Part shown: positions 8,532-58,510 of the stretch, one piece after another
Layout: every line of letters begins with the position of its first letter
How positions within the stretch are numbered: the first letter of the stretch is position 1
Virus record (IMG/VR): IMGVR_UViG_3300010938_000951
Span: 1 to 64,000 of that record
Direction: 5' to 3' (one strand)
DNA length: 64,000 nt
Notes under the pieces: model-generated
Database searches by the model: none
Seen by the model: only the letters and a program-made list of their open reading frames with translations
Told to the model about the DNA's origin: nothing
Translations under genes and position numbers: made by a program

Positions 8532-8822
8532 ATGAAAGTTTATTTATTAACAATATTTTTGTGTGCCTGCGCTACAGGGGTTTCCGATCCAATTGATGAT
8601 CCTGTAGTAGAAATTCCTGAGAATAAATCTGCTCCTAAACCAGCACCAACAACACCTTCTGCTTCTTCTTGTGAGGTAGATAGTTATTGGTCGGGTAATT
8701 GTTTTATTAAAAAGACTTATTGTTCTAATCAATTAGAACGAATTGATGTAATGTGTGATAGGGGCAGAAAGCTGTTTCCCTGGGAATATATTCCTGATCC
8801 TCCATTTGATGGTACAAAATAA
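8532..8822 (+). CDS. putative lipoprotein
   Basis: hydrophobic N-terminus with LCAC lipobox-like site, Pro-rich linker. Confidence 0.55.
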   Translation: MKVYLLTIFLCACATGVSDPIDDPVVEIPENKSAPKPAPTTPSASSCEVDSYWSGNCFIKKTYCSNQLERIDVMCDRGRKLFPWEYIPDPPFDGTK

Positions 8823-41326: not shown

Positions 41327-41403
41327 GGGACAGTAGCTCAGTGTTAGAGCACCGGCCTTTAACTGCCGGGGGTCGCTGGTTCAACTCCATGCCTGTCCCA
41401 CCA
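41327..41403 (+). tRNA. atypical tRNA with 8-nt anticodon loop CTTTAACT (identity undetermined)
   Basis: GGGACAG/CTGTCCC-ACCA; bulged T stem. Confidence 0.65.
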
Positions 41404-41463
41404 AACCGAATGCAAGTAGGATTACATCGGATTAAAAATAATCTTACTAACCTTTCGTCGGTT
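41404..41463 (+). ncRNA. Y-like scaffold RNA 1 (no cargo)
   Basis: AACCGA/TCGGTT and AGTAGGATTA/TAATCTTACT stems; CCGAATG and GGATTACAT motifs. Confidence 0.7.
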
Positions 41464-41465
41464 AT

Positions 41466-41552
41466 CCTGTCTGATTCGATGCCTGGGAGCATCTACCGGC
41501 TGTAACCCGGTCGCCAATGTGCTAAGTGGTTCGACTCCACCAGGCAGGACCA
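41466..41552 (+). tRNA. tRNA with Tyr anticodon (GTA), 8/4 allo-tRNA-like fold
   Basis: CCTGTCTG/CAGGCAGG-ACCA, 4-bp T stem, loop CTGTAAC. Confidence 0.75.
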
Positions 41553-41652
41553 AAACTAAACTGTAATAGGAGCTTCGGCTCTAATATTTGTGACGCACAA
41601 GAGTTAAGCAAGTATTTACAGTCTGTTCAATGACAACTGAATATCTGTTTAT

Positions 41653-41729
41653 CGGGGATTAGCTCAATCTGGTAGAGCGCTAGTTTTGGGTACTAGATGT
41701 TGCACGTTCAAATCGTGTATCCCCGACCA
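41653..41729 (+). tRNA. tRNA-Pro(TGG)
   Basis: cloverleaf, loop TTTGGGT, CCA. Confidence 0.9.
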
Positions 41730-41870
41730 TAGAAGATGGTCCTAATCACAGCCCCACAAGGGCCGCGAGTGGAAAACAATAGCATCATACTAGTTCTGAG
41801 TAAGCGGTATTGGTATCTGGCTTACGCTTTCCTTTTCCACAAGTAGGTTGACCTTTTACCAAATCTTCTA
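41730..41870 (+). ncRNA. unknown rod-like RNA between tRNAs
   Basis: nested TAGAAGAT/ATCTTCTA, GTGGAAAA/TTTTCCAC, GTAAGC/GCTTAC. Confidence 0.55.
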
Positions 41871-41875
41871 GTAAT

Positions 41876-41951
41876 GGCCCTGTCGTCTAATGGATAGGAT
41901 AAGAGACTTTCACCCTCTTGATGTTGGGTTCGATTCCCACCAGGGTCGCCA
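41876..41951 (+). tRNA. tRNA-Glu(TTC)
   Basis: cloverleaf, loop CTTTCAC, GCCA. Confidence 0.88.
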
Positions 41952-42059
41952 TGACGAATGCCCGAAAGGGTTTACATTGTATGCGAAACAATCCGATGGA
42001 GTTCGATTCTCCTTTAAGGCTGGTGCCAGGTAAAACAACTCTTTCATTATTAGTCGTCA
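41952..42059 (+). ncRNA. Y-like scaffold RNA 2 (anticodon arm GCG plus T arm)
   Basis: TGACGA/TCGTCA, GAAAGGGTT/AACTCTTTC; ATTGT-ATGCGAA-ACAAT; GGAG-TTCGATT-CTCC. Confidence 0.75.
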
Positions 42060-42061
42060 AT

Positions 42062-42138
42062 CAGAGCGTGGTGTTTAATGGCTAGCATCCGTGGTCTGGA
42101 ACCATGTGGAGTCAGTTCGAATCTGACCGCTCTGACCA
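42062..42138 (+). tRNA. tRNA-Pro(TGG), C33 variant
   Basis: CAGAGCG/CGCTCTG-ACCA, loop TCTGGAA. Confidence 0.8.
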
Positions 42139-42185
42139 ATGCCAGTATAACTCAAATATAATTTGGTAGATTAGTTTGGGCTGGT

Positions 42186-42321
42186 ACATACCGAATGAGC
42201 TTAAGAGCTACTTAGTCCTAAGGTAGGCAGTCCGCTTACCTGACAATGAATGTAGCTACCTTAAAACAACCGTTATAGTTAGGCTCTAAAGGAATTGTGA
42301 CAAACATTTTTGTCGGTATGT
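42186..42321 (+). ncRNA. Y-like scaffold RNA 3 (divergent)
   Basis: ACATACCGA/TCGGTATGT with CCGAATG and TTTGTCGG; lacks GGATTACAT. Confidence 0.55.
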
Positions 42322-42326
42322 TTTAT

Positions 42327-42403
42327 CAGGGAATGATGTTTAATGGCTAGCATCCTACCTTCGGAGAGTAGAAGTCCCGGTTCGAATCCGGGTTCCCTGA
42401 CCA
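42327..42403 (+). tRNA. tRNA-Pro(CGG)
   Basis: CAGGGAA/TTCCCTG-ACCA, loop TTCGGAG. Confidence 0.85.
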
Positions 42404-42536
42404 TCAGCAAATGCCTGTAGGGATTACATTGCATTTGGAGCACGAGGAGAAGGTCCGATTCCTTCCGGCCCGACCATATCGGGACGAGGTGTTATGGCAG
42501 CACGCGTAAAAATAGTCTCTCAATTCTTGTTGCTGA
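42404..42536 (+). ncRNA. Y-like scaffold RNA 4 (circularly permuted Pro-type tRNA)
   Basis: TCAGCAA/TTGCTGA scaffold; order anticodon, T arm, CGGCCCG-ACCA, CGGGACG, D arm. Confidence 0.8.
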
Positions 42537-42815
42537 ATATCTTCGCATTAGTGTAATAGCTAGTGCGAGGACCATGAGGTCACTCAACTGAAACCTCATC
42601 CATCTAAACGGTCGTCCATTATCGGTTAGAGGAAAATGTAAAGTGGACGTAGCCACAAGGTTCCCAGCGATCGAATGGCTACATTATATTGTTTGAAACT
42701 ATCACTGGGGGCGTAATCGGTTGCGCTTGATATTCCGATGACTAATGGGAGTGAAGATAGTTCCATTGCAGCCCGCAGCTATCACGATATAGTAACTCAG
42801 CGGGATGCGTTTTAT

Positions 42816-42889
42816 TCCGAGGTCGTTCAAAGGCAGGACGGGTCGCTGTTAACGACTCTATGTTGGTTCGATTCCAGCCCTCGGAGCCA
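42816..42889 (+). tRNA. tRNA-Asn(GTT)
   Basis: cloverleaf, loop CTGTTAA. Confidence 0.92.
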
Positions 42890-42892
42890 TAT

Positions 42893-42979
42893 TCTGCGGT
42901 AGCCTAATGGTAAGGCAGGCGGCTGTTAACCGCCCGGTGGTAAAACACTTTCTAGGTTCGAGTCCTAGCTGCAGAGCCA
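42893..42979 (+). tRNA. tRNA-Asn(GTT) with long variable arm
   Basis: loop CTGTTAA; extra arm GGTG-GTAAAA-CACT. Confidence 0.85.
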
Positions 42980-42987
42980 AATAATAC

Positions 42988-43342
42988 GGGGACTGATTAG
43001 ACTGGAATGATCCGTATTAGGTGTTGCGTTTGGTCAGTTCTGCGCAACGACAGGAGTTGTCACCGGAACTTTAACCCGGCCAATCTTCTGAGATGAATGC
43101 GGTAAGGACTACATTACTAATAGCGATCCGCAAGGACAACCCACTCCTTTACAGTACACAAGAGCGGTAGAAAATGCAAACTGAGTACCTGACAAACTTG
43201 ATAACCAGTAAAGCTTCAAGTGTAGGCGGTGAACTACTAAAATTTGCTGCGGACCTTATCGATATCCATAACAGGACTCTTTAAGCAAACCCGCTGTCTT
43301 TACTACCTCTTGTATTGAAATACAAGTTCTTGTCATCAATCT
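42988..43342 (+). ncRNA. unknown ~350-nt structured RNA
   Basis: no ORF; long-range pairings GACAGGAGTTGT/ACAAGTTCTTGTC and ACAAGAG(C)GGTAG/CTACCTCTTGT. Confidence 0.5.
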
Positions 43343-43344
43343 AT

Positions 43345-43419
43345 TCCGCTCTAGTGTAATTAGCACGACGATCCTTTTTCGGGTCGGGGGTCATGGTTCG
43401 AGTCCATGGGGCGGAGCCA
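43345..43419 (+). tRNA. atypical tRNA (T-rich anticodon loop, identity undetermined)
   Basis: TCCGCTC/GGGCGGA-GCCA; arm CGATC-CTTTTTCG-GGTCG. Confidence 0.65.
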
Positions 43420-43500
43420 AAGCGAGCCATAGAGGAACTTCCTTCTACTCATTTATTAACTGAAAACAGTTCTTCTGCTTTCTCGCTAACTTTTACTACT

Positions 43501-43674
43501 ATGGAAAAAATTGCAACATATAATTTGTCTGAATGTATTCATGCCCGCAATGGTTTAAATGAGCCTTTATGTGGGTTTGATCCTAAACAGGCAAAATTAA
43601 CAGACAACATAGAAGAAGTTGACTGTCCTAGTTGCAAGAAATATAAACAATTTCATCGTTCACAACCAATTTAA
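43501..43674 (+). CDS. small Cys/His protein
   Basis: CIH..LCG..VDCPSC. Confidence 0.5.
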   Translation: MEKIATYNLSECIHARNGLNEPLCGFDPKQAKLTDNIEEVDCPSCKKYKQFHRSQPI

Positions 43675-43689
43675 TACCATGAGAAAATT

Positions 43690-44118
43690 ATGTTTACATC
43701 TACCGGAATCTTGCATTATGATCCCGGCTTGGGATCTAAACAATATGACCCTTGGTGGGCTCTTCTAATCTGTGACGATGAAGTGTCTAGGTATTATGCC
43801 TGGTTATTAAAGAGAAATGGAGTAGAAGTTTATCCCAATGATAAAGGATTGTGGGGCACACACGTTTCAGTTTTGAAAGGTCAAATCCCAGAAAATACGA
43901 CTAATTGGGGGAAATACGAAGGCTACGAAGTAGAATTCCATTACAATCATCTTGTCCGTTATGATAACGGTAAACATGCTTGGGTGGATGTATATTCCGA
44001 AGATTTATCGTATATACGTCAAGAATTAGGATTCGAGGCAAAGCCCTGGTATCACTTGACAATAGGAAGATTAGTTAGGCCATATGCAGTAGACTTTACA
44101 AAGTATGGCATAACATGA
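43690..44118 (+). CDS. 2H phosphoesterase-like protein
   Basis: two HxS/T motifs: THVSV and YHLTI. Confidence 0.65.
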   Translation: MFTSTGILHYDPGLGSKQYDPWWALLICDDEVSRYYAWLLKRNGVEVYPNDKGLWGTHVSVLKGQIPENTTNWGKYEGYEVEFHYNHLVRYDNGKHAWVDVYSEDLSYIRQELGFEAKPWYHLTIGRLVRPYAVDFTKYGIT

Positions 44119-44132
44119 TATAACTGCTATAC

Positions 44133-44207
44133 GGTCCCGTCGTTCAATGGTTAGGACAGCACCTTGTCACGGTGCATACGAGGGTTCGATTCCCTTCGGG
44201 ACCGCCA
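44133..44207 (+). tRNA. tRNA-Asp(GTC)
   Basis: cloverleaf, loop TTGTCAC. Confidence 0.92.
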
Positions 44208-44216
44208 GCATATAAT

Positions 44217-44291
44217 GCCTCCGTACGCATCTGGTGAAGCGGGGTGATTGTCAATCATCTGAGGGCGGTTCGATTCCGCTCGGGGGCGCCA
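44217..44291 (+). tRNA. tRNA-Asp(GTC)
   Basis: cloverleaf, loop TTGTCAA. Confidence 0.85.
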
Positions 44292-44362
44292 AGCCAAATG
44301 CCTTGATAGGATTACATTGAACTGTTAATTCAAACCTATATCTTATCTAATTTTTGTTGGCT
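44292..44362 (+). ncRNA. Y-like scaffold RNA 5 (isolated Asn anticodon stem-loop)
   Basis: AGCCAA/TTGGCT, GATAGGAT/ATCTTATC; cargo TTGAA-CTGTTAA-TTCAA. Confidence 0.8.
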
Positions 44363-44366
44363 ACAT

Positions 44367-44445
44367 CGGACAAAAGGTAAGCTGGTGGCATCCGGAAGTC
44401 TTATAAACTTCTCATAGGAGGGTTCGATTCCCTCTTGTCCGACCA
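44367..44445 (+). tRNA. tRNA-Ile(TAT)
   Basis: CGGACAA/TTGTCCG-ACCA, GAAGT-CTTATAA-ACTTC. Confidence 0.8.
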
Positions 44446-44448
44446 TAT

Positions 44449-44525
44449 GGCACGGTAGTCCAAAGGCAGGAGACACCTGACTTAAAATCAGTTCAGTGTG
44501 GGTTCGAATCCCACCCGTGCTACCA
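44449..44525 (+). tRNA. tRNA-Leu(TAA), short variable loop
   Basis: loop CTTAAAA, CCA. Confidence 0.85.
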
Positions 44526-44557
44526 AATGATAATCTTGCGCAAGATTATCAGATAAA

Positions 44558-44702
44558 GACAGAATGCCCCGAAGGAATACATAGAACAGCAATTGAATGA
44601 AAATCAATAGATTGTAGGTGCGAATCCTACCTCTCCCACCAATAATAAGATATATGGGAGGGAAGCTAAATAAAACAAACTTCTTTCAAATCTTTGTCTG
44701 TC
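44558..44702 (+). ncRNA. Y-like scaffold RNA 6 (circularly permuted tRNA-Phe)
   Basis: GACAGA/TCTGTC; ATTGA-ATGAAAA-TCAAT, T arm, CTCTCCC-ACCA, linker, GGGAGGG. Confidence 0.8.
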
Positions 44703-44705
44703 AAT

Positions 44706-44781
44706 GGAGCTTGAGCAAGTGTGGTCATTGCATCGGTCTGAAAAGCCGACAAATCCGGTTCGATCCCGGAAGGCTCCACCA
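44706..44781 (+). tRNA. tRNA-Phe(GAA)
   Basis: loop CTGAAAA, CCA. Confidence 0.85.
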
Positions 44782-44790
44782 ACTACCAAT

Positions 44791-44865
44791 GGTCCTGTAG
44801 CTCAGTGGTAGAGCGCTTGCCTGAAGAGCAGGGCGTCGGGGGTTCAATTCCCTCCGGGACCACCA
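44791..44865 (+). tRNA. tRNA-Phe(GAA)
   Basis: loop CTGAAGA, CCA. Confidence 0.92.
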
Positions 44866-45219
44866 ATGAGAATTGTTCAGAAGCCTTGGGGCCATGAAGA
44901 AATCTGGGCCGAAACTGACAGTTATGTTGGTAAAATCCTAGTAATTAATCCTGGTCACAAACTTTCTCGACAATATCATAATTTCAAAGAAGAAACTTTT
45001 AGAGTACTAGAAGGTATTCTTTATCTTGAAATTGGCAATCCTGGTGATATAGATTTTGCTACTTATACTTTATATGAAGGAAATTCTTTTCATTGCCCGC
45101 CAAAAACAATTCATAGAATGATTTGTTCTACTGGCAATATTCAGGCAGTTAAAGTACTAGAAGTATCGACCAATCATTTGGATGATGTAGTAAGACTAGA
45201 AGATGACTATAAAAGATAA
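44866..45219 (+). CDS. cupin (mannose-6-phosphate isomerase C-terminal-like)
   Basis: KPWGHE, LSRQYH..KEET, IHR, DDVVRLEDDY. Confidence 0.85.
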   Translation: MRIVQKPWGHEEIWAETDSYVGKILVINPGHKLSRQYHNFKEETFRVLEGILYLEIGNPGDIDFATYTLYEGNSFHCPPKTIHRMICSTGNIQAVKVLEVSTNHLDDVVRLEDDYKR

Positions 45220-45394
45220 AATAGTAGAGTTAGAAATTGAAAGACTTTCTTTATTAGAAGTAGTAAGGCAATTTACAATACATGATTGCGATGCAAGAAT
45301 GTGGTGTGAACTAAATGAATTCTTAATAAAGATTGAAGAAAGAGCAGAAGAAATAAATCGTGCCATAGCTCAGTTGGTTAGAGCGCATGTCTGA
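45203..45394 (+). CDS. hypothetical protein overlapping tRNA-Ile
   Basis: short ORF. Confidence 0.4.
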   Translation: MTIKDKIVELEIERLSLLEVVRQFTIHDCDARMWCELNEFLIKIEERAEEINRAIAQLVRAHV

Positions 45395-45435
45395 TACACA
45401 TGAGGTCGCAGGTTCGACTCCCGCTGGCACGACCA
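45359..45435 (+). tRNA. tRNA-Ile(GAT)
   Basis: loop CTGATAC, CCA. Confidence 0.92.
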
Positions 45436-45444
45436 AGATAACAT

Positions 45445-45519
45445 GGGATGTTAGTTCAACGGTGAGAACGGAAGTCCGATAAACTTCAGACAATGGTTCA
45501 ACTCCATTACATCCTACCA
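45445..45519 (+). tRNA. tRNA-Ile(GAT), C33 variant
   Basis: GAAGT-CCGATAA-ACTTC, CCA. Confidence 0.8.
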
Positions 45520-45520
45520 C

Positions 45521-45660
45521 TGAAACAAATGCTCGCAGAGGATTACATCGCATATCCAGCGGGTTACGTGAGTGCGAATCTCACTCTCAGCTCATTATGC
45601 TGAGATCGTCTAGCAGTCTAGGACACCTAAAAAATAGTCTTCTCAATTCTTGTTGTTTCA
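45521..45660 (+). ncRNA. Y-like scaffold RNA 7 (circularly permuted Gly-type tRNA)
   Basis: TGAAACAA/TTGTTTCA; CGC-ATATCCA-GCG, T arm, TCTCAGC/GCTGAGA, D arm. Confidence 0.8.
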
Positions 45661-45667
45661 CAATTAT

Positions 45668-45863
45668 GCCTCCTATCATGGCTGGAAACTGATAGCGATA
45701 CCACCAGGCGGTCCCAGAGGGATGCAGCAGGGGAAGTACAAGAGTATCAAACAGAAGGGACGCCTTCTAGCCTGCTCACATGGTTGGAAACTGTGACGCG
45801 GTCTTGGTCGCGATAGACCAAGTAGTAAAACCGCAAGCCTGCCCACATGGTCGGAAACTGTGG
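45668..45863 (+). repeat. three copies of a hairpin with conserved core CATGGYYGGAAACTG
   Basis: copies at 45668, 45770 and 45837 with co-varying stems. Confidence 0.75.
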
Positions 45864-45866
45864 AAA

Positions 45867-45943
45867 GAATCGTCTAGCTCAATGGTAGAGCTACGTCACT
45901 AGTGACGACGTGGATCTGGGTTCGAATCCCAGGATGATTCCCA
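45867..45943 (+). tRNA. His-like tRNA (G-1:C73) with 9-nt anticodon loop
   Basis: GAATCGTC/GATGATTC-CCA; ACGTC-ACTAGTGAC-GACGT. Confidence 0.7.
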
Positions 45944-45945
45944 GC

Positions 45946-46097
45946 GAAGCAAATGCCCCGAAGGTTTACATTTGAGAAACTGTATTATCGCAAGATAGTC
46001 GTGGGTTCGAATCCCACATCACCGCAAGGTGATTGGCTGAGTGGTCTAAAGCGACAGTGCCGCAAGGCATGCTAACTTTCAAATTTTTTGTTGCTTC
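45946..46097 (+). ncRNA. Y-like scaffold RNA 8 (YrlA-like, permuted class II tRNA)
   Basis: GAAGCAA/TTGCTTC; variable arm, GTGGG-TTCGAAT-CCCAC, acceptor ATCACC-GCAA-GGTGAT, D arm. Confidence 0.85.
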
Positions 46098-53063: not shown

Positions 53064-53137
53064 TCTCCGATCGTCTAATGGTAGGACGGGTCGCTCTGAA
53101 CGATCAAATCGAGGTTCGAATCCTCAGCGGAGAACCA
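53064..53137 (+). tRNA. tRNA-Gln(CTG)
   Basis: loop CTCTGAA, ACCA. Confidence 0.82.
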
Positions 53138-53297
53138 GCAACAAATGCCAGCTAGGATTACATAGCTCGCAACTATTTTCCCCGCCAGCCCGAGAGGGCA
53201 AATAAACTTTTATTTTTTATGTTACTAACACGGGGAAATGTTCAAGTCGGTCTGAAAAACCGATAAGGAACTCTTCTTGGCACCTTTAGTTGTTGCT
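53137..53297 (+). ncRNA. Y-like scaffold RNA 9 (two anticodon-like stem-loops)
   Basis: AGCAACAA/TTGTTGCT, GGATTACAT; ATAG-CTCGCAA-CTAT and TCGGT-CTGAAAA-ACCGA. Confidence 0.7.
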
Positions 53298-53303
53298 AAA
53301 TAT

Positions 53304-53404
53304 AGCAGATTGGAGCAGCGGTAGCTCGCCAGGTTCACAATGGGGCTGATGCCCTATAAGGATACCCTGGAGGTCGTGTGGTTCGATTCCCTCATCTGCA
53401 ACCA
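53304..53404 (+). tRNA. initiator-type tRNA-Met with 25-nt insert in the anticodon
   Basis: 1:72 mismatch, TGGAGCAG..GGTAGCTCG D arm; CCAGG-TTCA[25 nt]TAC-CCTGG. Confidence 0.8.
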
Positions 53405-53412
53405 AAACAATC

Positions 53413-53808
53413 ATGAACCCTAAAGAAGTTGGCGAGAAAACAGAAGCCGCCATCCTAAATCATTTCATCCAAAAAGGCGTTTCAGTATCATTGCCGTGGG
53501 GTAATAACCAGCGCTATGATATGATTATTGATGTAGATGGTAAACTTCTTAAAGCACAATGTAAAACTGGCACCTACAAAAAGGGTGTCATTTCTTTTTC
53601 TACTAGCAGCAAAGCTGGCGGAAAAGAACGTAAAGATTATAAGGGTCAAATTGATTGTTTCTTAGTTTATTGTGAACAGCTAAACAAATACTATAAAGTA
53701 GACATTGAGGGTTTACATAATGTAAATGCTATGTCTCTTAGAGTTGATCCTCTTAAAAAGTTTGGTCCCAAGTCTGCCATTAGGTGGGCAAAAGACTATG
53801 AAGTATAA
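53413..53808 (+). CDS. PD-(D/E)XK homing endonuclease, I-Ssp6803I-like
   Basis: GEKTE..G..VSLPWG...RYDMIIDVDGKLLKAQCKT. Confidence 0.85.
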   Translation: MNPKEVGEKTEAAILNHFIQKGVSVSLPWGNNQRYDMIIDVDGKLLKAQCKTGTYKKGVISFSTSSKAGGKERKDYKGQIDCFLVYCEQLNKYYKVDIEGLHNVNAMSLRVDPLKKFGPKSAIRWAKDYEV

Positions 53809-57830: not shown

Positions 57831-58169
57831 GTGAAAGTTATGAGCTTACCTTGGTCACGAGATATGCAATTAGATCCTGGCACATTTGGAGGGTCTCCAG
57901 CATGTCATGTATTAGTTGATATGATGAACAAAAATGTGATTCCTGTTCAGGAAAAACATCGAGTTCTATCATTCATTAGCGGTACTATTTTGCATTTCAA
58001 GGCCATCTCTGCCATCAAAGAAAGAGGTATAAGGGCACGGGTTATGGTGCTTTTGAAAAATGATCTGTTTTCCAGAATAGATCAAATGCCATATCCAGCT
58101 CATTTCAACTCTTATCTGAAGAACGTAGTAAATCACCACTTCAGGCGATACTTAAAAGAAGTAGTCTAG
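57831..58169 (+). CDS. hypothetical protein
   Basis: ORF whose end overlaps RNase P helix P1. Confidence 0.5.
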   Translation: MKVMSLPWSRDMQLDPGTFGGSPACHVLVDMMNKNVIPVQEKHRVLSFISGTILHFKAISAIKERGIRARVMVLLKNDLFSRIDQMPYPAHFNSYLKNVVNHHFRRYLKEVV

Positions 58170-58488
58170 ACAATCGCTCTGCAAGGAGAGGAAAGTCGGA
58201 GCTACATAGGACAGTCTGCTGGCTAACGGCCAGGCGTAGTAATACGACGGAAAGTGCAACAGAAAATAAACCGCCCGCAAGGGTAAGGGTGAAATGGTGA
58301 GGTAAGAGCTTACCGCATGTTTGGCGACAAATATGGCAAGGCAAACCCCAGATGTAGCAAGCTAAACAGAGAGTGACTTGTCCGGTCAATACTCTCGGGT
58401 TAGTGCTGGAGCCGTCAAGTAATTGTCGGCCAAGATTAATGATTGTCTCGATTTATAGACAGAACTCCGCTTATAGGGCTACTTCTTT
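58155..58488 (+). ncRNA. rnpB: RNase P RNA (bacterial type A)
   Basis: P1 AAGAAGTAGTC/GGCTACTTCTT; GAGGAAAGTCGGAGC, GGAAAGTGCAACAGAAA, GGGTGAAA..GGTAAGAGC, GGCAAACCCC, ACAGAACTCCGCTTA with compensatory P4. Confidence 0.95.
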
Positions 58489-58510
58489 TAAGTTCTTTTA
58501 AGGAATTATT

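What the first reader, a model, noticed from the sequence alone, without database searches (positions are those of the whole stretch)
53137..53297. Y-like scaffold with two anticodon-like hairpins and a central stem
Seen: ATAG-CTCGCAA-CTAT (CGC) and TCGGT-CTGAAAA-ACCGA (GAA, nearly the same as the anticodon arm of tRNA-Phe at 44706) flank a TTTCCCCG/CGGGGAAA stem containing GCCC-GAGA-GGGC. Inference: a multivalent anticodon display.
Basis: partly seen in the sequence, partly recalled or inferred. Interest (0 to 1): 0.65.

Follow-up and report, generated by a model that had tools for sequence, protein, structure and literature searches.

The report
Divergent phage Y RNA between tRNAs
The 161-base structured spacer between two tRNA genes of this soil jumbo phage is one of about eleven divergent Y RNA-like (YrlA-type) genes scattered through the phage's tRNA arrays, most likely partners of the Ro60 protein the phage encodes, not a purpose-built "anticodon display".

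Summary

At least 10-11 inter-tRNA spacers of this 267-kb phage share one scaffold:
- a terminal stem P1;
- CRAAUGC;
- a second helix P2 (AGGAUU with AAUCUU);
- UUACAU;
- a variable head;
- ..UUG, then the P1 return strand.

P1 and P2 covary strongly. A covariance model built without this element finds it full length (38.6 bits, E 4.5e-7).

The scaffold matches the Ro60-binding stem of Rfam YrlA (Y RNA-like). Three further lines link the family to Ro60:
- The phage encodes a full Ro60/Rsr protein (33424-35115).
- Three related phages, including cultured Myxococcus phage Mx1, carry both Ro60 and family copies.
- In four bacterial Ro60 loci the model hits only tandem copies beside the Ro60 gene. 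One of these is a near-canonical YrlA (63 bits).

This copy lacks the tRNA-like T and D arms, gets no Rfam hit, and is truncated or absent in close relatives. The anticodon-like loops are not conserved.

Verdict: a new variant of a known kind.

The parts
53137..53144 (+). P1, 5' strand (AGCAACAA). Its first base is the terminal A of the CCA of tRNA-Gln.
   Evidence: Perfect 8-bp inverted repeat with 53290-53297. Pair probabilities 0.68-0.99. P1 covaries in the family: 5 of 6 modelled pairs show changes on both sides.
53142..53150 (+). Conserved 5' motif CAAAUGC, continuing into the junction AUGCCA. It corresponds to YrlA's CGAAUGC (published as GNCGAAN0-1G), the proposed Ro60 recognition site.
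   Evidence: AUGC is invariant in 25 of 26 aligned copies. Same motif in the Rfam YrlA consensus. Motif described in PMC4201824 and PMC12135203.
53151..53157 (+). P2, 5' strand (GCUAGGA).
   Evidence: Pairs with 53275-53281 in 7 standard pairs. P2 covaries in the family: 7 of 9 pairs show changes on both sides. In this copy the thermodynamic probability is only 0.01 unless P2 is enforced.
53158..53163 (+). UUACAU, the conserved apex of P2. It corresponds to YrlA's YUAY.
   Evidence: (U)ACAU is kept in 23 of 26 aligned copies; one of the exceptions is a partial match with a gap here. YUAY is described in PMC4201824.
53162..53176 (+). Head hairpin 1: AUAG-CUCGCAA-CUAU, a 7-nt loop in anticodon-loop format. 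It sits at the 'V arm' position of the family.
   Evidence: Forms when P2 is enforced (probability about 0.7). Sister copies have a 4-5 bp hairpin with a 7-nt loop at the same place. The G003 ortholog keeps the stem but its loop is CUCAUAA.
53177..53238 (+). Head hairpin 2: the UUUCCCCG/CGGGGAAA stem enclosing the GCCC-GAGA-GGGC hairpin (53188-53199) and an A/U-rich stretch.
   Evidence: Inverted repeat I4. Pair probabilities 0.66-1.0. In G003 the tetraloop is GAAA, so the GNRA form is kept, but the 3' strand is deleted.
53240..53271 (+). Head hairpin 3: GUUC..GAAC enclosing GUCGGU-CUGAAAA-ACCGAU (53246-53264).
   Evidence: Pair probabilities 0.88-1.0. 16 of 17 bases match the anticodon arm of tRNA-Phe at 44733-44749. 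Absent from the G003 ortholog.
53275..53281 (+). P2, 3' strand (UCUUGGC).
   Evidence: The pyrimidine-rich return strand (AAUCUU type) is conserved and covaries in the family.
53282..53289 (+). 3' junction ACCUUUAG. In the family this reads ..UUUUG or ..CUUG, and in YrlA it reads AcUuG.
53290..53297 (+). P1, 3' strand (UUGUUGCU), followed by a 6-nt trailer before tRNA-Met.
53064..53137 (+). tRNA-Gln(CUG), directly abutting the element.
   Evidence: ARAGORN and Rfam. 9 of the 11 family copies start 0-2 nt after a tRNA CCA.
53304..53404 (+). tRNA-Met(CAU) with a 25-nt insertion in the anticodon loop. RNase P cleavage at its 5' end would define the element's 3' side.
   Evidence: Rfam tRNA 39.8 bits. 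ARAGORN -i reports i(34,25).
33424..35115 (+). Phage Ro60/Rsr ortholog (TROVE plus Ro60 vWA domains), the proposed protein partner.
   Evidence: Pfam vWA_Ro60 9.2e-15 and TROVE 4.4e-10. PDB matches: phage phiLo Ro60 1.4e-15, D. radiodurans Rsr 2.8e-13, Ro60 4.8e-8, each over nearly the full length.
41404..46097 (+). Sister copies of the family within the window: 41404-41463, 41952-42059, 42404-42536, 43092-43337 (motif level only), 44292-44362, 44558-44702, 45521-45660, 45946-46097. Two more lie beyond the window at 79687-79815 and 79893-80022 of the record.
58158..58489 (+). Phage-encoded RNase P RNA (class A), the likely processing enzyme of the array. Its link to the element is inferred only.
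   Evidence: Rfam 279.9 bits.

Best explanation
The element is a divergent member of the bacterial and phage Y RNA family (YrlA type).

Proposed mechanism:
1. It is transcribed as one cistron of the phage's tRNA array.
2. It is released by maturation of the 3' end of the upstream tRNA-Gln and by RNase P cleavage at the downstream tRNA-Met.
3. Its paired ends (P1), the CAAAUGC junction, helix P2 and UUACAU form the stem module that in Y RNAs binds the Ro60 ring. Here the partner would be the phage's own Ro60, encoded at 33424-35115.
4. The variable three-hairpin head takes the place of YrlA's tRNA-like domain. In known Y RNAs that domain tethers Ro60 to a partner such as PNPase or gates its cavity.

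Shown here by computation:
- The fold.
- Family membership and covariation of P1 and P2.
- Correspondence of the motifs to YrlA.
- The genomic link between the family and Ro60 genes.

Inferred, not shown:
- Expression and processing.
- Ro60 binding by this copy.
- Any role of the head.

This copy is evolutionarily dispensable and may be a weak or decaying member.
For: 1. A family exists. The motif ATGY-N2-9-GGNWTACAT occurs 10 times on the tRNA strand of the record, 0 times on the other strand and 0 times in the reversed control. The related phage G001 has 4 forward and 0 reverse.

2. Each copy has its own terminal stem and its own P2.
- On the 15-sequence alignment, 95.5% of cells are paired, 12 of 15 pairs change on both sides, 0 of 500 shuffles reach this, and slid controls reach at most 67% paired.
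- On the 26-sequence alignment, 91% of cells are paired with 97 double-change cells.

3. Model R2 was built without this element. It finds window 53139-53295 full length at 38.6 bits, E 4.5e-7.

4. The Rfam YrlA consensus has the same P1 / AUGC / P2 / CUAc ... AcUuG / P1' layout. A minimal G001 copy with no head still scores 28.2 bits full length with YrlA.

5. A Ro60 gene is in the window and in relatives G001 and G003. Myxococcus phage Mx1 also has one (52% identical Ro60) and carries two copies in its tRNA array.

6. In four bacterial Ro60 loci all 16 R2 hits lie on the Ro60 strand within about 0.8 kb of the gene, 3-5 in tandem. These loci have no tRNAs. One of the hits is a near-canonical YrlA at 63 bits, against a gathering score of 69.

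7. Published work supports the class:
- Y RNAs with a CGAA-type 5' motif bind Ro60 or Rsr.
- Second Y RNAs that lack the full tRNA-like domain are known.
- Phage-encoded Y RNA-like RNAs bind phage Ro60 and host PNPase.
Sources: PMC4201824 and PMC12135203.
Against: - This copy gets no YrlA or tRNA match in Rfam even at E <= 10.
- It has no T-arm or D-arm.
- Its 5' motif reads CAAAUG, not CGAAUG.
- Folded alone, it prefers a local hairpin that sequesters UGC of the motif and the 5' strand of P2. P2 has probability 0.01, and the enforced structure costs +1.9 kcal/mol in minimum free energy.
- Its R2 score is the lowest among the well-aligned window copies.
- The G003 ortholog has lost its 3' half.
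- G001 and a soil relative have no element at this site.
- The Ro60 gene is 18 kb away. The published association criterion is within 4 kb.
- There is no expression data. Only metagenome contigs were available.
Confidence: 0.7

Rival explanations
1. A decayed or neutral copy. The element descends from the Y RNA-like family but no longer functions in this phage. It survives only as a structured spacer that is trimmed away during tRNA processing.
For: - It is truncated in G003 and absent in G001 and in a soil relative.
- It lacks the T and D arms that most sister copies keep.
- P2 is thermodynamically disfavoured.
- It has the lowest model score among the well-aligned window copies.
Against: - P1 (8 of 8 pairs), P2 (7 of 7 standard pairs), AUGC and UUACAU are all intact.
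- The head is strongly structured (z -3.7).
- A near-identical strain keeps it with 1 mismatch over 174 nt.
- Minimal copies with no head at all are conserved between phages, so the lack of a tRNA-like head does not by itself imply decay.
Confidence: 0.17
2. A processing or insulator element of the tRNA array, independent of Ro60. Its paired ends present the neighbouring tRNA termini to RNase P or to 3' nucleases, or it is a self-cleaving ribozyme that frees the CCA end of the upstream tRNA.
For: - 9 of the 11 copies start 0-2 nt after a tRNA CCA, and several end 2-6 nt before the next tRNA.
- The phage encodes its own RNase P RNA.
Against: - The same RNA family occurs in tandem beside Ro60 genes in bacterial loci that have no tRNAs.
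- No ribozyme family matches at E <= 10.
- The first bases after the CCA pair with the extreme 3' end. This does not fit the HDV-like topology (my reading of the structure, from memory of that fold).
Confidence: 0.06
3. The element is a decoy or display of two anticodon stem-loops (CGC and GAA) that titrates or recruits anticodon-recognising factors such as host anticodon nucleases, modification enzymes or synthetases.
For: - Both loops have the U33/A37 format.
- The GAA hairpin matches the anticodon arm of the phage's own tRNA-Phe in 16 of 17 bases.
- Several sister copies carry a hairpin with a 7-nt loop in the same position, and one has a GAA loop just upstream of the tRNA-Phe genes.
Against: - Loop sequences change between orthologs, and the GAA hairpin is deleted in G003.
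- Minimal family members have no such hairpins.
- The first loop is buried in the unconstrained fold.
- The match to tRNA-Phe is not significant genome-wide (E 0.5).
Confidence: 0.05
4. A tRNA pseudogene or a miniature mobile element with inverted-repeat ends, inserted between two tRNA genes.
For: - Terminal inverted repeats, and presence/absence polymorphism with exact borders.
- Short similarities to the neighbouring tRNAs.
Against: - There is no second similar copy in the genome by BLAST or nhmmer.
- There is no tRNA model hit.
- The repeats are at chance level.
- The strict strand bias and the covariation point to an RNA-level family.
Confidence: 0.02

Closest known systems
YrlA (Y RNA-like A; Rfam RF02553), the Ro60/Rsr-bound RNA of bacteria and phages
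   Same: - The 5' and 3' ends pair.
- A CGAAUGC-type motif follows P1.
- There is a second helix, followed by YUAY.
- A ..CUUG junction precedes the return strand.
- A Ro60 gene lies in the same genome on the same strand.
- Sister copies and the bacterial copies give full-length sub-threshold YrlA matches of 17-63 bits.
   Different: - This copy has no T-arm, acceptor-like stem or D-arm.
- It gives no Rfam match at E <= 10.
- It is 161 nt long, against a model length of 114.
- Its motif reads CAAAUG.
- It lies inside a tRNA array 18 kb from Ro60, not within 4 kb.
- It is one of about 11 copies per genome.
Second Y RNAs without a full tRNA-like domain: Salmonella and M. smegmatis YrlB, D. radiodurans Yrn2, and Thermus phage phiLo Yrl1 and Yrl2
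   Same: - A Ro60-binding stem with a CGAA-type motif, joined to a different head.
- Several Y RNAs per genome.
- phiLo shows that phage-encoded Y-like RNAs bind phage Ro60 and host PNPase (PMC4201824, PMC12135203).
   Different: Those RNAs lie next to the Ro60 gene. Their heads are unrelated to the three hairpins of this copy.
Stable small RNAs of the phage T4 tRNA cluster (species 1 and 2, also called RNA C and D). This is recalled from memory and was not tested.
   Same: They are non-tRNA structured RNAs, co-transcribed with and processed from a phage tRNA cluster.
   Different: No homology was tested or is known. T4 has no Ro60.
tRNA
   Same: - The GUCGGU-CUGAAAA-ACCGAU hairpin is nearly identical to the anticodon arm of the phage's tRNA-Phe.
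- The family as a whole looks tRNA-derived, since many copies carry T-arm-like hairpins.
   Different: This copy has no cloverleaf, no T-loop and no D-loop, and its 3' end lacks CCA. Neither ARAGORN nor the Rfam tRNA model matches it.
HDV-like 'theta' and other self-cleaving ribozymes found next to phage tRNAs (recalled from memory)
   Same: The position immediately downstream of a tRNA CCA.
   Different: The topology differs: here the first bases pair with the last. No Rfam ribozyme family matches.

Membership tests
Y RNA, YrlA type | The 5' and 3' ends pair to form the stem that carries the Ro60 site. | tested here: met
   8-bp P1 plus P2. Both helices covary across the family.
Y RNA, YrlA type | The conserved 5' motif GNCGAAN0-1G (the CGAA motif; CGAAUGC in the Rfam consensus). 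| tested here: inconclusive
   This copy reads AACAAAUGC. That matches the family consensus CRAAUGC, but it has A where the published motif has G. Five other copies in the record share CAAAUGC, and four read CGAAUG (three CGAAUGC, one CGAAUGU).
Y RNA, YrlA type | A conserved YUAY following the stem. | tested here: met
   UUAC at 53158-53161. The feature is described in PMC4201824.
Y RNA, YrlA type | A tRNA-like domain with T-arm, acceptor-like stem-loop and D-arm. | tested here: not met
   No T-loop or D-loop hairpins appear in the constrained fold. There is no tRNA or YrlA match at E <= 10. Most sister copies do have a T-arm-like hairpin.
Y RNA, YrlA type | A score at or above the Rfam gathering threshold (69 bits). 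| tested here: not met
   No hit for this copy. Sister copies score 17-28 bits, Mx1 32 bits, and the Brucella copy 63 bits.
Y RNA, YrlA type | Encoded with a Ro60/Rsr (TROVE) gene, on the same strand. | tested here: met
   - A Ro60 ortholog lies at 33424-35115 on the + strand, but 18 kb away.
- The family co-occurs with Ro60 in G001, G003 and Mx1.
- The family lies within 0.8 kb of Ro60 in four bacterial loci.
Y RNA, YrlA type | Physical binding to Ro60. | not testable with these tools
   This needs EMSA or immunoprecipitation.
The phage tRNA-array spacer family defined here (model R2) | A full-length significant match to a covariance model built without the element. | tested here: met
   38.6 bits, E 4.5e-7, model positions 1-104.
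tRNA | A cloverleaf with T and D loops, detectable by ARAGORN or Rfam RF00005. | tested here: not met
Known self-cleaving ribozymes (HDV-like, hatchet, twister, hammerhead, pistol) | A match to the family's covariance model. | tested here: not met
   No such family appears at E <= 10.
Miniature inverted-repeat mobile element | Several near-identical copies in the genome. | tested here: not met
   Only the self-match is found by BLAST and nhmmer.

The most novel reading that the evidence does not exclude
Jumbo phages of the Mx1 group embed a diversified library of Ro60-tethering Y RNAs as cistrons of their tRNA arrays. The variable heads would be pieces of tRNAs (anticodon arms, T-arms or whole permuted tRNA-like domains). 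Each head would direct the phage Ro60 and host exonuclease machinery to a different tRNA-handling enzyme or damaged tRNA, or shield it from one. One example would be a head acting as a decoy for a host anticodon nuclease. In that reading the two anticodon-format loops of this copy would be functional ligands presented on a Ro60 scaffold.
Probability: 0.1. Interest if true: 0.8.

Novelty: new variant of a known kind. Interest (0 to 1): 0.5.

Why it matters
Y RNAs and Ro60 are known in bacteria and in some phages, but their function in phages is open. So far they have been sought only within a few kilobases of the Ro60 gene, and candidates overlapping tandem tRNA genes were discarded.

Here a family of about eleven divergent Y-like RNAs sits inside the tRNA arrays of a jumbo phage. 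The copies abut tRNA 3' ends and carry very different heads on one conserved Ro60-type stem. This suggests three things:
- Y RNA repertoires are larger and more modular than the Rfam model captures.
- In these phages the RNAs are made and processed like tRNAs.
- Phage Ro60 may be tied to tRNA quality control or to conflicts over tRNA.

The family is also present in the cultured Myxococcus phage Mx1, so all of this can be tested at the bench. For annotation, it explains structured "spacers" in phage tRNA arrays. It also flags at least one probable false protein call in Mx1.

Tried and rejected
- **Rfam on the element itself**: nothing but chance-level CRISPR-repeat hits.
- **Open reading frames**: no meaningful frame in the element.
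- **Promoter and terminator scan**: no site inside the element.
- **Second copy in the genome**: BLAST and nhmmer found only short chance matches plus the tRNA-Phe arm. Primary-sequence search therefore missed the family.
- **Exact 23-mer search in viral contigs**: 0 hits.
- **DNA search of the element in G001 and G002**: nothing.
- **Short direct repeats shared with the neighbouring tRNAs**: judged to be at chance level, so the tRNA-pseudogene idea was dropped.
- **MAFFT on copies of mixed length**: it misaligned the 3' ends, so I went through covariance models instead.
- **HDV-like, hatchet or twister ribozyme downstream of a tRNA**: considered because of the position. Rejected on topology and the lack of Rfam matches.
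- **Integron attC-like or MITE-like DNA element**: rejected, because there are no conserved recombination-core motifs, no near-identical copies, and a strict strand bias.
- **A 3-bp AUG/CAU pseudoknot flanking the 5' strand of P2**: possible, but both sides are invariant, so there is no covariation evidence. Left open.
- **Sub-threshold YrlA hits across whole genomes**: confounded by tRNAs, since the control rang in 13 of 14 genomes. I relied only on full-length hits to tRNA-free copies.
- **Sequencing runs**: only soil metagenome contigs carried the sequence, and no RNA run held a useful share. Expression and RNA ends could not be examined.
- **Two reviews on bacterial Y RNAs** were not held in the library. 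No supplement of PMC4201824 was available either.
- the large protein searches, structure prediction and complex prediction were not needed.

Full report
**Context.** The window is the first 64 kb of a 266,899-bp IMG/VR virus record. The record carries 65 tRNA genes in several arrays and a class A RNase P RNA at 58158-58489. Near-identical sequence occurs in soil metagenomes. The finding (53137-53297) fills the whole spacer between tRNA-Gln(CUG), 53064-53137, and an intron-bearing tRNA-Met(CAU), 53304-53404.

**Observation.**
- The + strand folds at -47.5 kcal/mol, z -3.7 against dinucleotide shuffles. The - strand gives z -3.4.
- The central stem, the GCCC-GAGA-GGGC hairpin and the GUCGGU-CUGAAAA-ACCGAU hairpin are stable in the ensemble (probabilities 0.66-1.0).
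- The ATAG-CTCGCAA-CTAT hairpin is not. Unconstrained folding replaces it with UGC.AGCUA/UAGCU.GCA.
- The CUGAAAA hairpin matches the anticodon arm of tRNA-Phe (44733-44749) in 16 of 17 bases. The genome-wide E-value is 0.5.
- There is no ORF, no promoter or terminator site and no Rfam family in the element.

**A family, not a singleton.** I folded every inter-tRNA spacer of the record and found a shared plan in many of them:
- a terminal stem whose sequence differs in each copy;
- (A)AUGC(C);
- a few bases, then AGGAUUACAU or a close variant;
- a head of variable length;
- a pyrimidine-rich AAUCUU-type segment;
- ..UUG, and then the return strand of the terminal stem.

The motif ATGY-N2-9-GGNWTACAT occurs 10 times on the tRNA strand, never on the other strand and never in the reversed control. 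A related 268-kb phage (G001) has 4 forward and 0 reverse. Anchored extraction gave 11 copies in this record, 60 to 246 nt long. Nine of them begin 0-2 nt after a tRNA CCA, and several end 2-6 nt before the next tRNA.

**Covariance models.**
- A model built from four short copies recovered 15 copies. On that alignment 95.5% of cells pair, 12 of 15 pairs change on both sides, 0 of 500 shuffles reach this, and slid registers give 30-67% pairing.
- A second model (R2) was built from those 15 sequences, which did not include the finding. It finds window 53139-53295 over its full length at 38.6 bits, E 4.5e-7. It also finds the two copies beyond the window at 79.7-80.0 kb.
- On the 26-sequence alignment 91% of cells pair, with 97 double-change cells.
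- In the finding, P1 is 53137-53144 with 53290-53297, and P2 is GCUAGGA (53151-53157) with UCUUGGC (53275-53281). AUGC and UUACAU sit in the family positions.
Hairpin 1 then has probability about 0.7.

**What the family is.** The Rfam YrlA (Y RNA-like) consensus reads: stem, AUGC, second helix, CUAc, tRNA-like T, acceptor-like and D arms, return of the helix, AcUuG, return of the stem. That is the same scaffold.
- YrlA gives full-length sub-threshold matches to the sister copy at 42404-42539 (17.2 bits).
- It also matches a headless G001 copy (28.2 bits). In that case the score can only come from the stem module.
- It matches the tRNA-like head of copy 45946-46097 (26.3 bits).
- The published hallmarks of YrlA are a GNCGAAN0-1G motif near the 5' end, thought to be the Ro60/Rsr site, and a YUAY after the stem (PMC4201824). 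A 'CGAA motif' was also used to find the Y-like RNAs of Thermus phage phiLo, which bind phage Ro60 and host PNPase (PMC12135203). The family consensus CRAAUGC ... UUAC fits both hallmarks.

**Link to Ro60.**
- The window encodes a 563-residue protein with TROVE and Ro60-vWA domains at 33424-35115. It aligns over nearly its full length to phage phiLo Ro60, D. radiodurans Rsr and Ro60 in the PDB.
- Relatives G001 and G003 also have a TROVE gene 6-7 kb upstream of their first family copy.
- The closest Ro60 among cultured phages is that of Myxococcus phage Mx1, at 52% identity. Mx1's tRNA array holds two family copies (40.8 and 32.1 bits), one of which scores 32 bits with YrlA.
- The strongest test used four bacterial loci fetched only by similarity to the Ro60 protein: a Neisseria scaffold, two Brucella species and a Hyphomicrobium MAG. 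There R2 gave 16 hits, all on the Ro60 strand and all within about 0.8 kb of the gene, 3-5 in tandem. These loci contain no tRNA or any other Rfam gathering-level match.
- The first Brucella copy is a near-canonical YrlA with T and D arms (63 bits, against a gathering score of 69). The second is a T-arm-less variant (39.8 bits).
- So the model built from phage tRNA-array spacers recognises Ro60-adjacent Y RNAs.

**How this copy differs, and how labile it is.**
- Most sister copies carry a T-arm-like hairpin (loops UUCGAUU, UCCGAUU, UGCGAAU). One has a whole permuted class II tRNA-like head. This copy has none, which explains the lack of any Rfam hit.
- The hairpin right after UUACAU, with a 7-nt loop, is a recurrent position in the family, but its loop sequence is not conserved between orthologs.
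- The ortholog in the 359-kb phage G003 keeps the first 85 nt or so at about 86% identity. Its first loop reads CUCAUAA and its tetraloop GAAA. It then jumps straight to tRNA-Met, losing the central stem's return strand, the GAA hairpin, and the return strands of P2 and P1.
- In G001, tRNA-Gln and tRNA-Met are 1 nt apart.
- In one soil run a near-identical contig keeps the element (1 mismatch in 174 nt). A more diverged contig in the same run joins 53137 to 53301 through only 11 unrelated bases.
- The copy is therefore dispensable among close relatives.

**Mechanism (inferred).** The element is transcribed within the tRNA array. It is freed by tRNA 3'-end maturation upstream and by RNase P cleavage downstream. 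P1, CAAAUGC, P2 and UUACAU then bind the phage Ro60 ring. By analogy with D. radiodurans, Salmonella and phiLo, the head would gate Ro60 or tether it to a partner such as PNPase (PMC4201824, PMC12135203). Nothing here shows expression, processing or binding. For this copy, the competing local hairpin and the labile evolution leave a real chance that it is a weak or decaying member.

**Novelty.** Phage Ro60 and Y-like RNAs are known. They were reported in mycobacteriophages, CcrColossus, Bacillus phage G and phiLo. Jumbo-phage TROVE proteins 'with a tRNA-like partner' are also mentioned in PMC7824862. The original survey kept only candidates within 4 kb of Ro60 and discarded those overlapping tandem tRNA genes. 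I found no description of three features seen here: Y-like RNAs embedded as cistrons of phage tRNA arrays, about eleven copies per genome, and heads that range from nothing to a permuted tRNA. My literature search was limited. I therefore rate the finding a new variant of a known kind.

**Limits.**
- E-values from the session's covariance models are rough, because the calibration is short.
- Alignments made by the model lean towards its structure. The slid-register and shuffle controls address this only in part.
- Orthologous copies from related phages are counted as separate rows.

Noticed in passing
window 53304-53404 and 53413-53808: tRNA-Met(CAU) carries a 25-nt insertion in its anticodon loop (ARAGORN -i).
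- G003 keeps the insertion.
- L002 has a different insertion of about 27 nt at the same place.
- G001 has the uninterrupted loop UUCAUAC.

The gene immediately downstream is a PDDEXK_5 endonuclease (Pfam 1.3e-29). Its only PDB relative is 2OST. From memory, 2OST is I-Ssp6803I, the homing endonuclease of the tRNA-fMet group I intron.

This may be a free-standing homing endonuclease next to an interrupted, and so immune, target. Whether so short an insert is spliced is unknown.
   Followed up: partly
window 58158-58489: A complete class A bacterial RNase P RNA (279.9 bits) is encoded by the phage, downstream of the tRNA arrays.
   Followed up: no
G000 record 176544-176700; window 41327-41403 and 43345-43419: The record has two tRNAs with a CUA anticodon (amber suppressors). 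ARAGORN also reads two tRNAs as having 8-nt anticodon loops (ttaa and tttt). Together these hint at stop-codon recoding or frameshift suppression in part of the genome.
   Followed up: no
window 45946-46097: This sister copy has a head that reads as a circularly permuted class II tRNA. In order it shows a long variable arm, a T-arm, an acceptor-like stem capped by GCAA, and a D-arm of the Ser/Leu type. This matches the published YrlA head layout. Rfam YrlA scores 26.3 bits on 45996-46053.
   Followed up: partly
window 44558-44702: This sister copy contains a weak tRNA-like match (Rfam tRNA 23.6 bits at 44571-44638) with a GAA loop. It lies directly upstream of the two tRNA-Phe(GAA) genes.
   Followed up: no
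L211 8554-8655 (Myxococcus phage Mx1, OR576727.2, about 45522-45623): A family copy (32.1 bits) overlaps the annotated 40-residue 'hypothetical protein' WNM70101.1 (locus positions 8556-8678). That CDS is probably a false call over an RNA gene.
   Followed up: partly
window 31936-33123, 36920-37780 and 37695-38318: The neighbours of the Ro60 gene include a nucleoside 2-deoxyribosyltransferase-like/NUDIX fusion, a microbial-type PARG and a GIY-YIG nuclease. This looks like an ADP-ribose and nucleotide-conflict gene neighbourhood.
   Followed up: no
L212 4243-4938; L213 6544-6925; L215 6696-7311: Bacterial Ro60 genes about 50% identical to the phage's are flanked by tandem arrays of 3-5 Y-like RNAs (Neisseria sp. 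scaffold, Brucella pituitosa and B. cytisi, Hyphomicrobium MAG). None of these reaches the Rfam YrlA gathering score.
   Followed up: partly
L193 about 1442-1520 (G003): In G003 the third tRNA-Gln, upstream of the truncated element, looks disrupted. ARAGORN calls only two Gln genes there, and the alignment to the window's third Gln is poor except at its 3' end.
   Followed up: no
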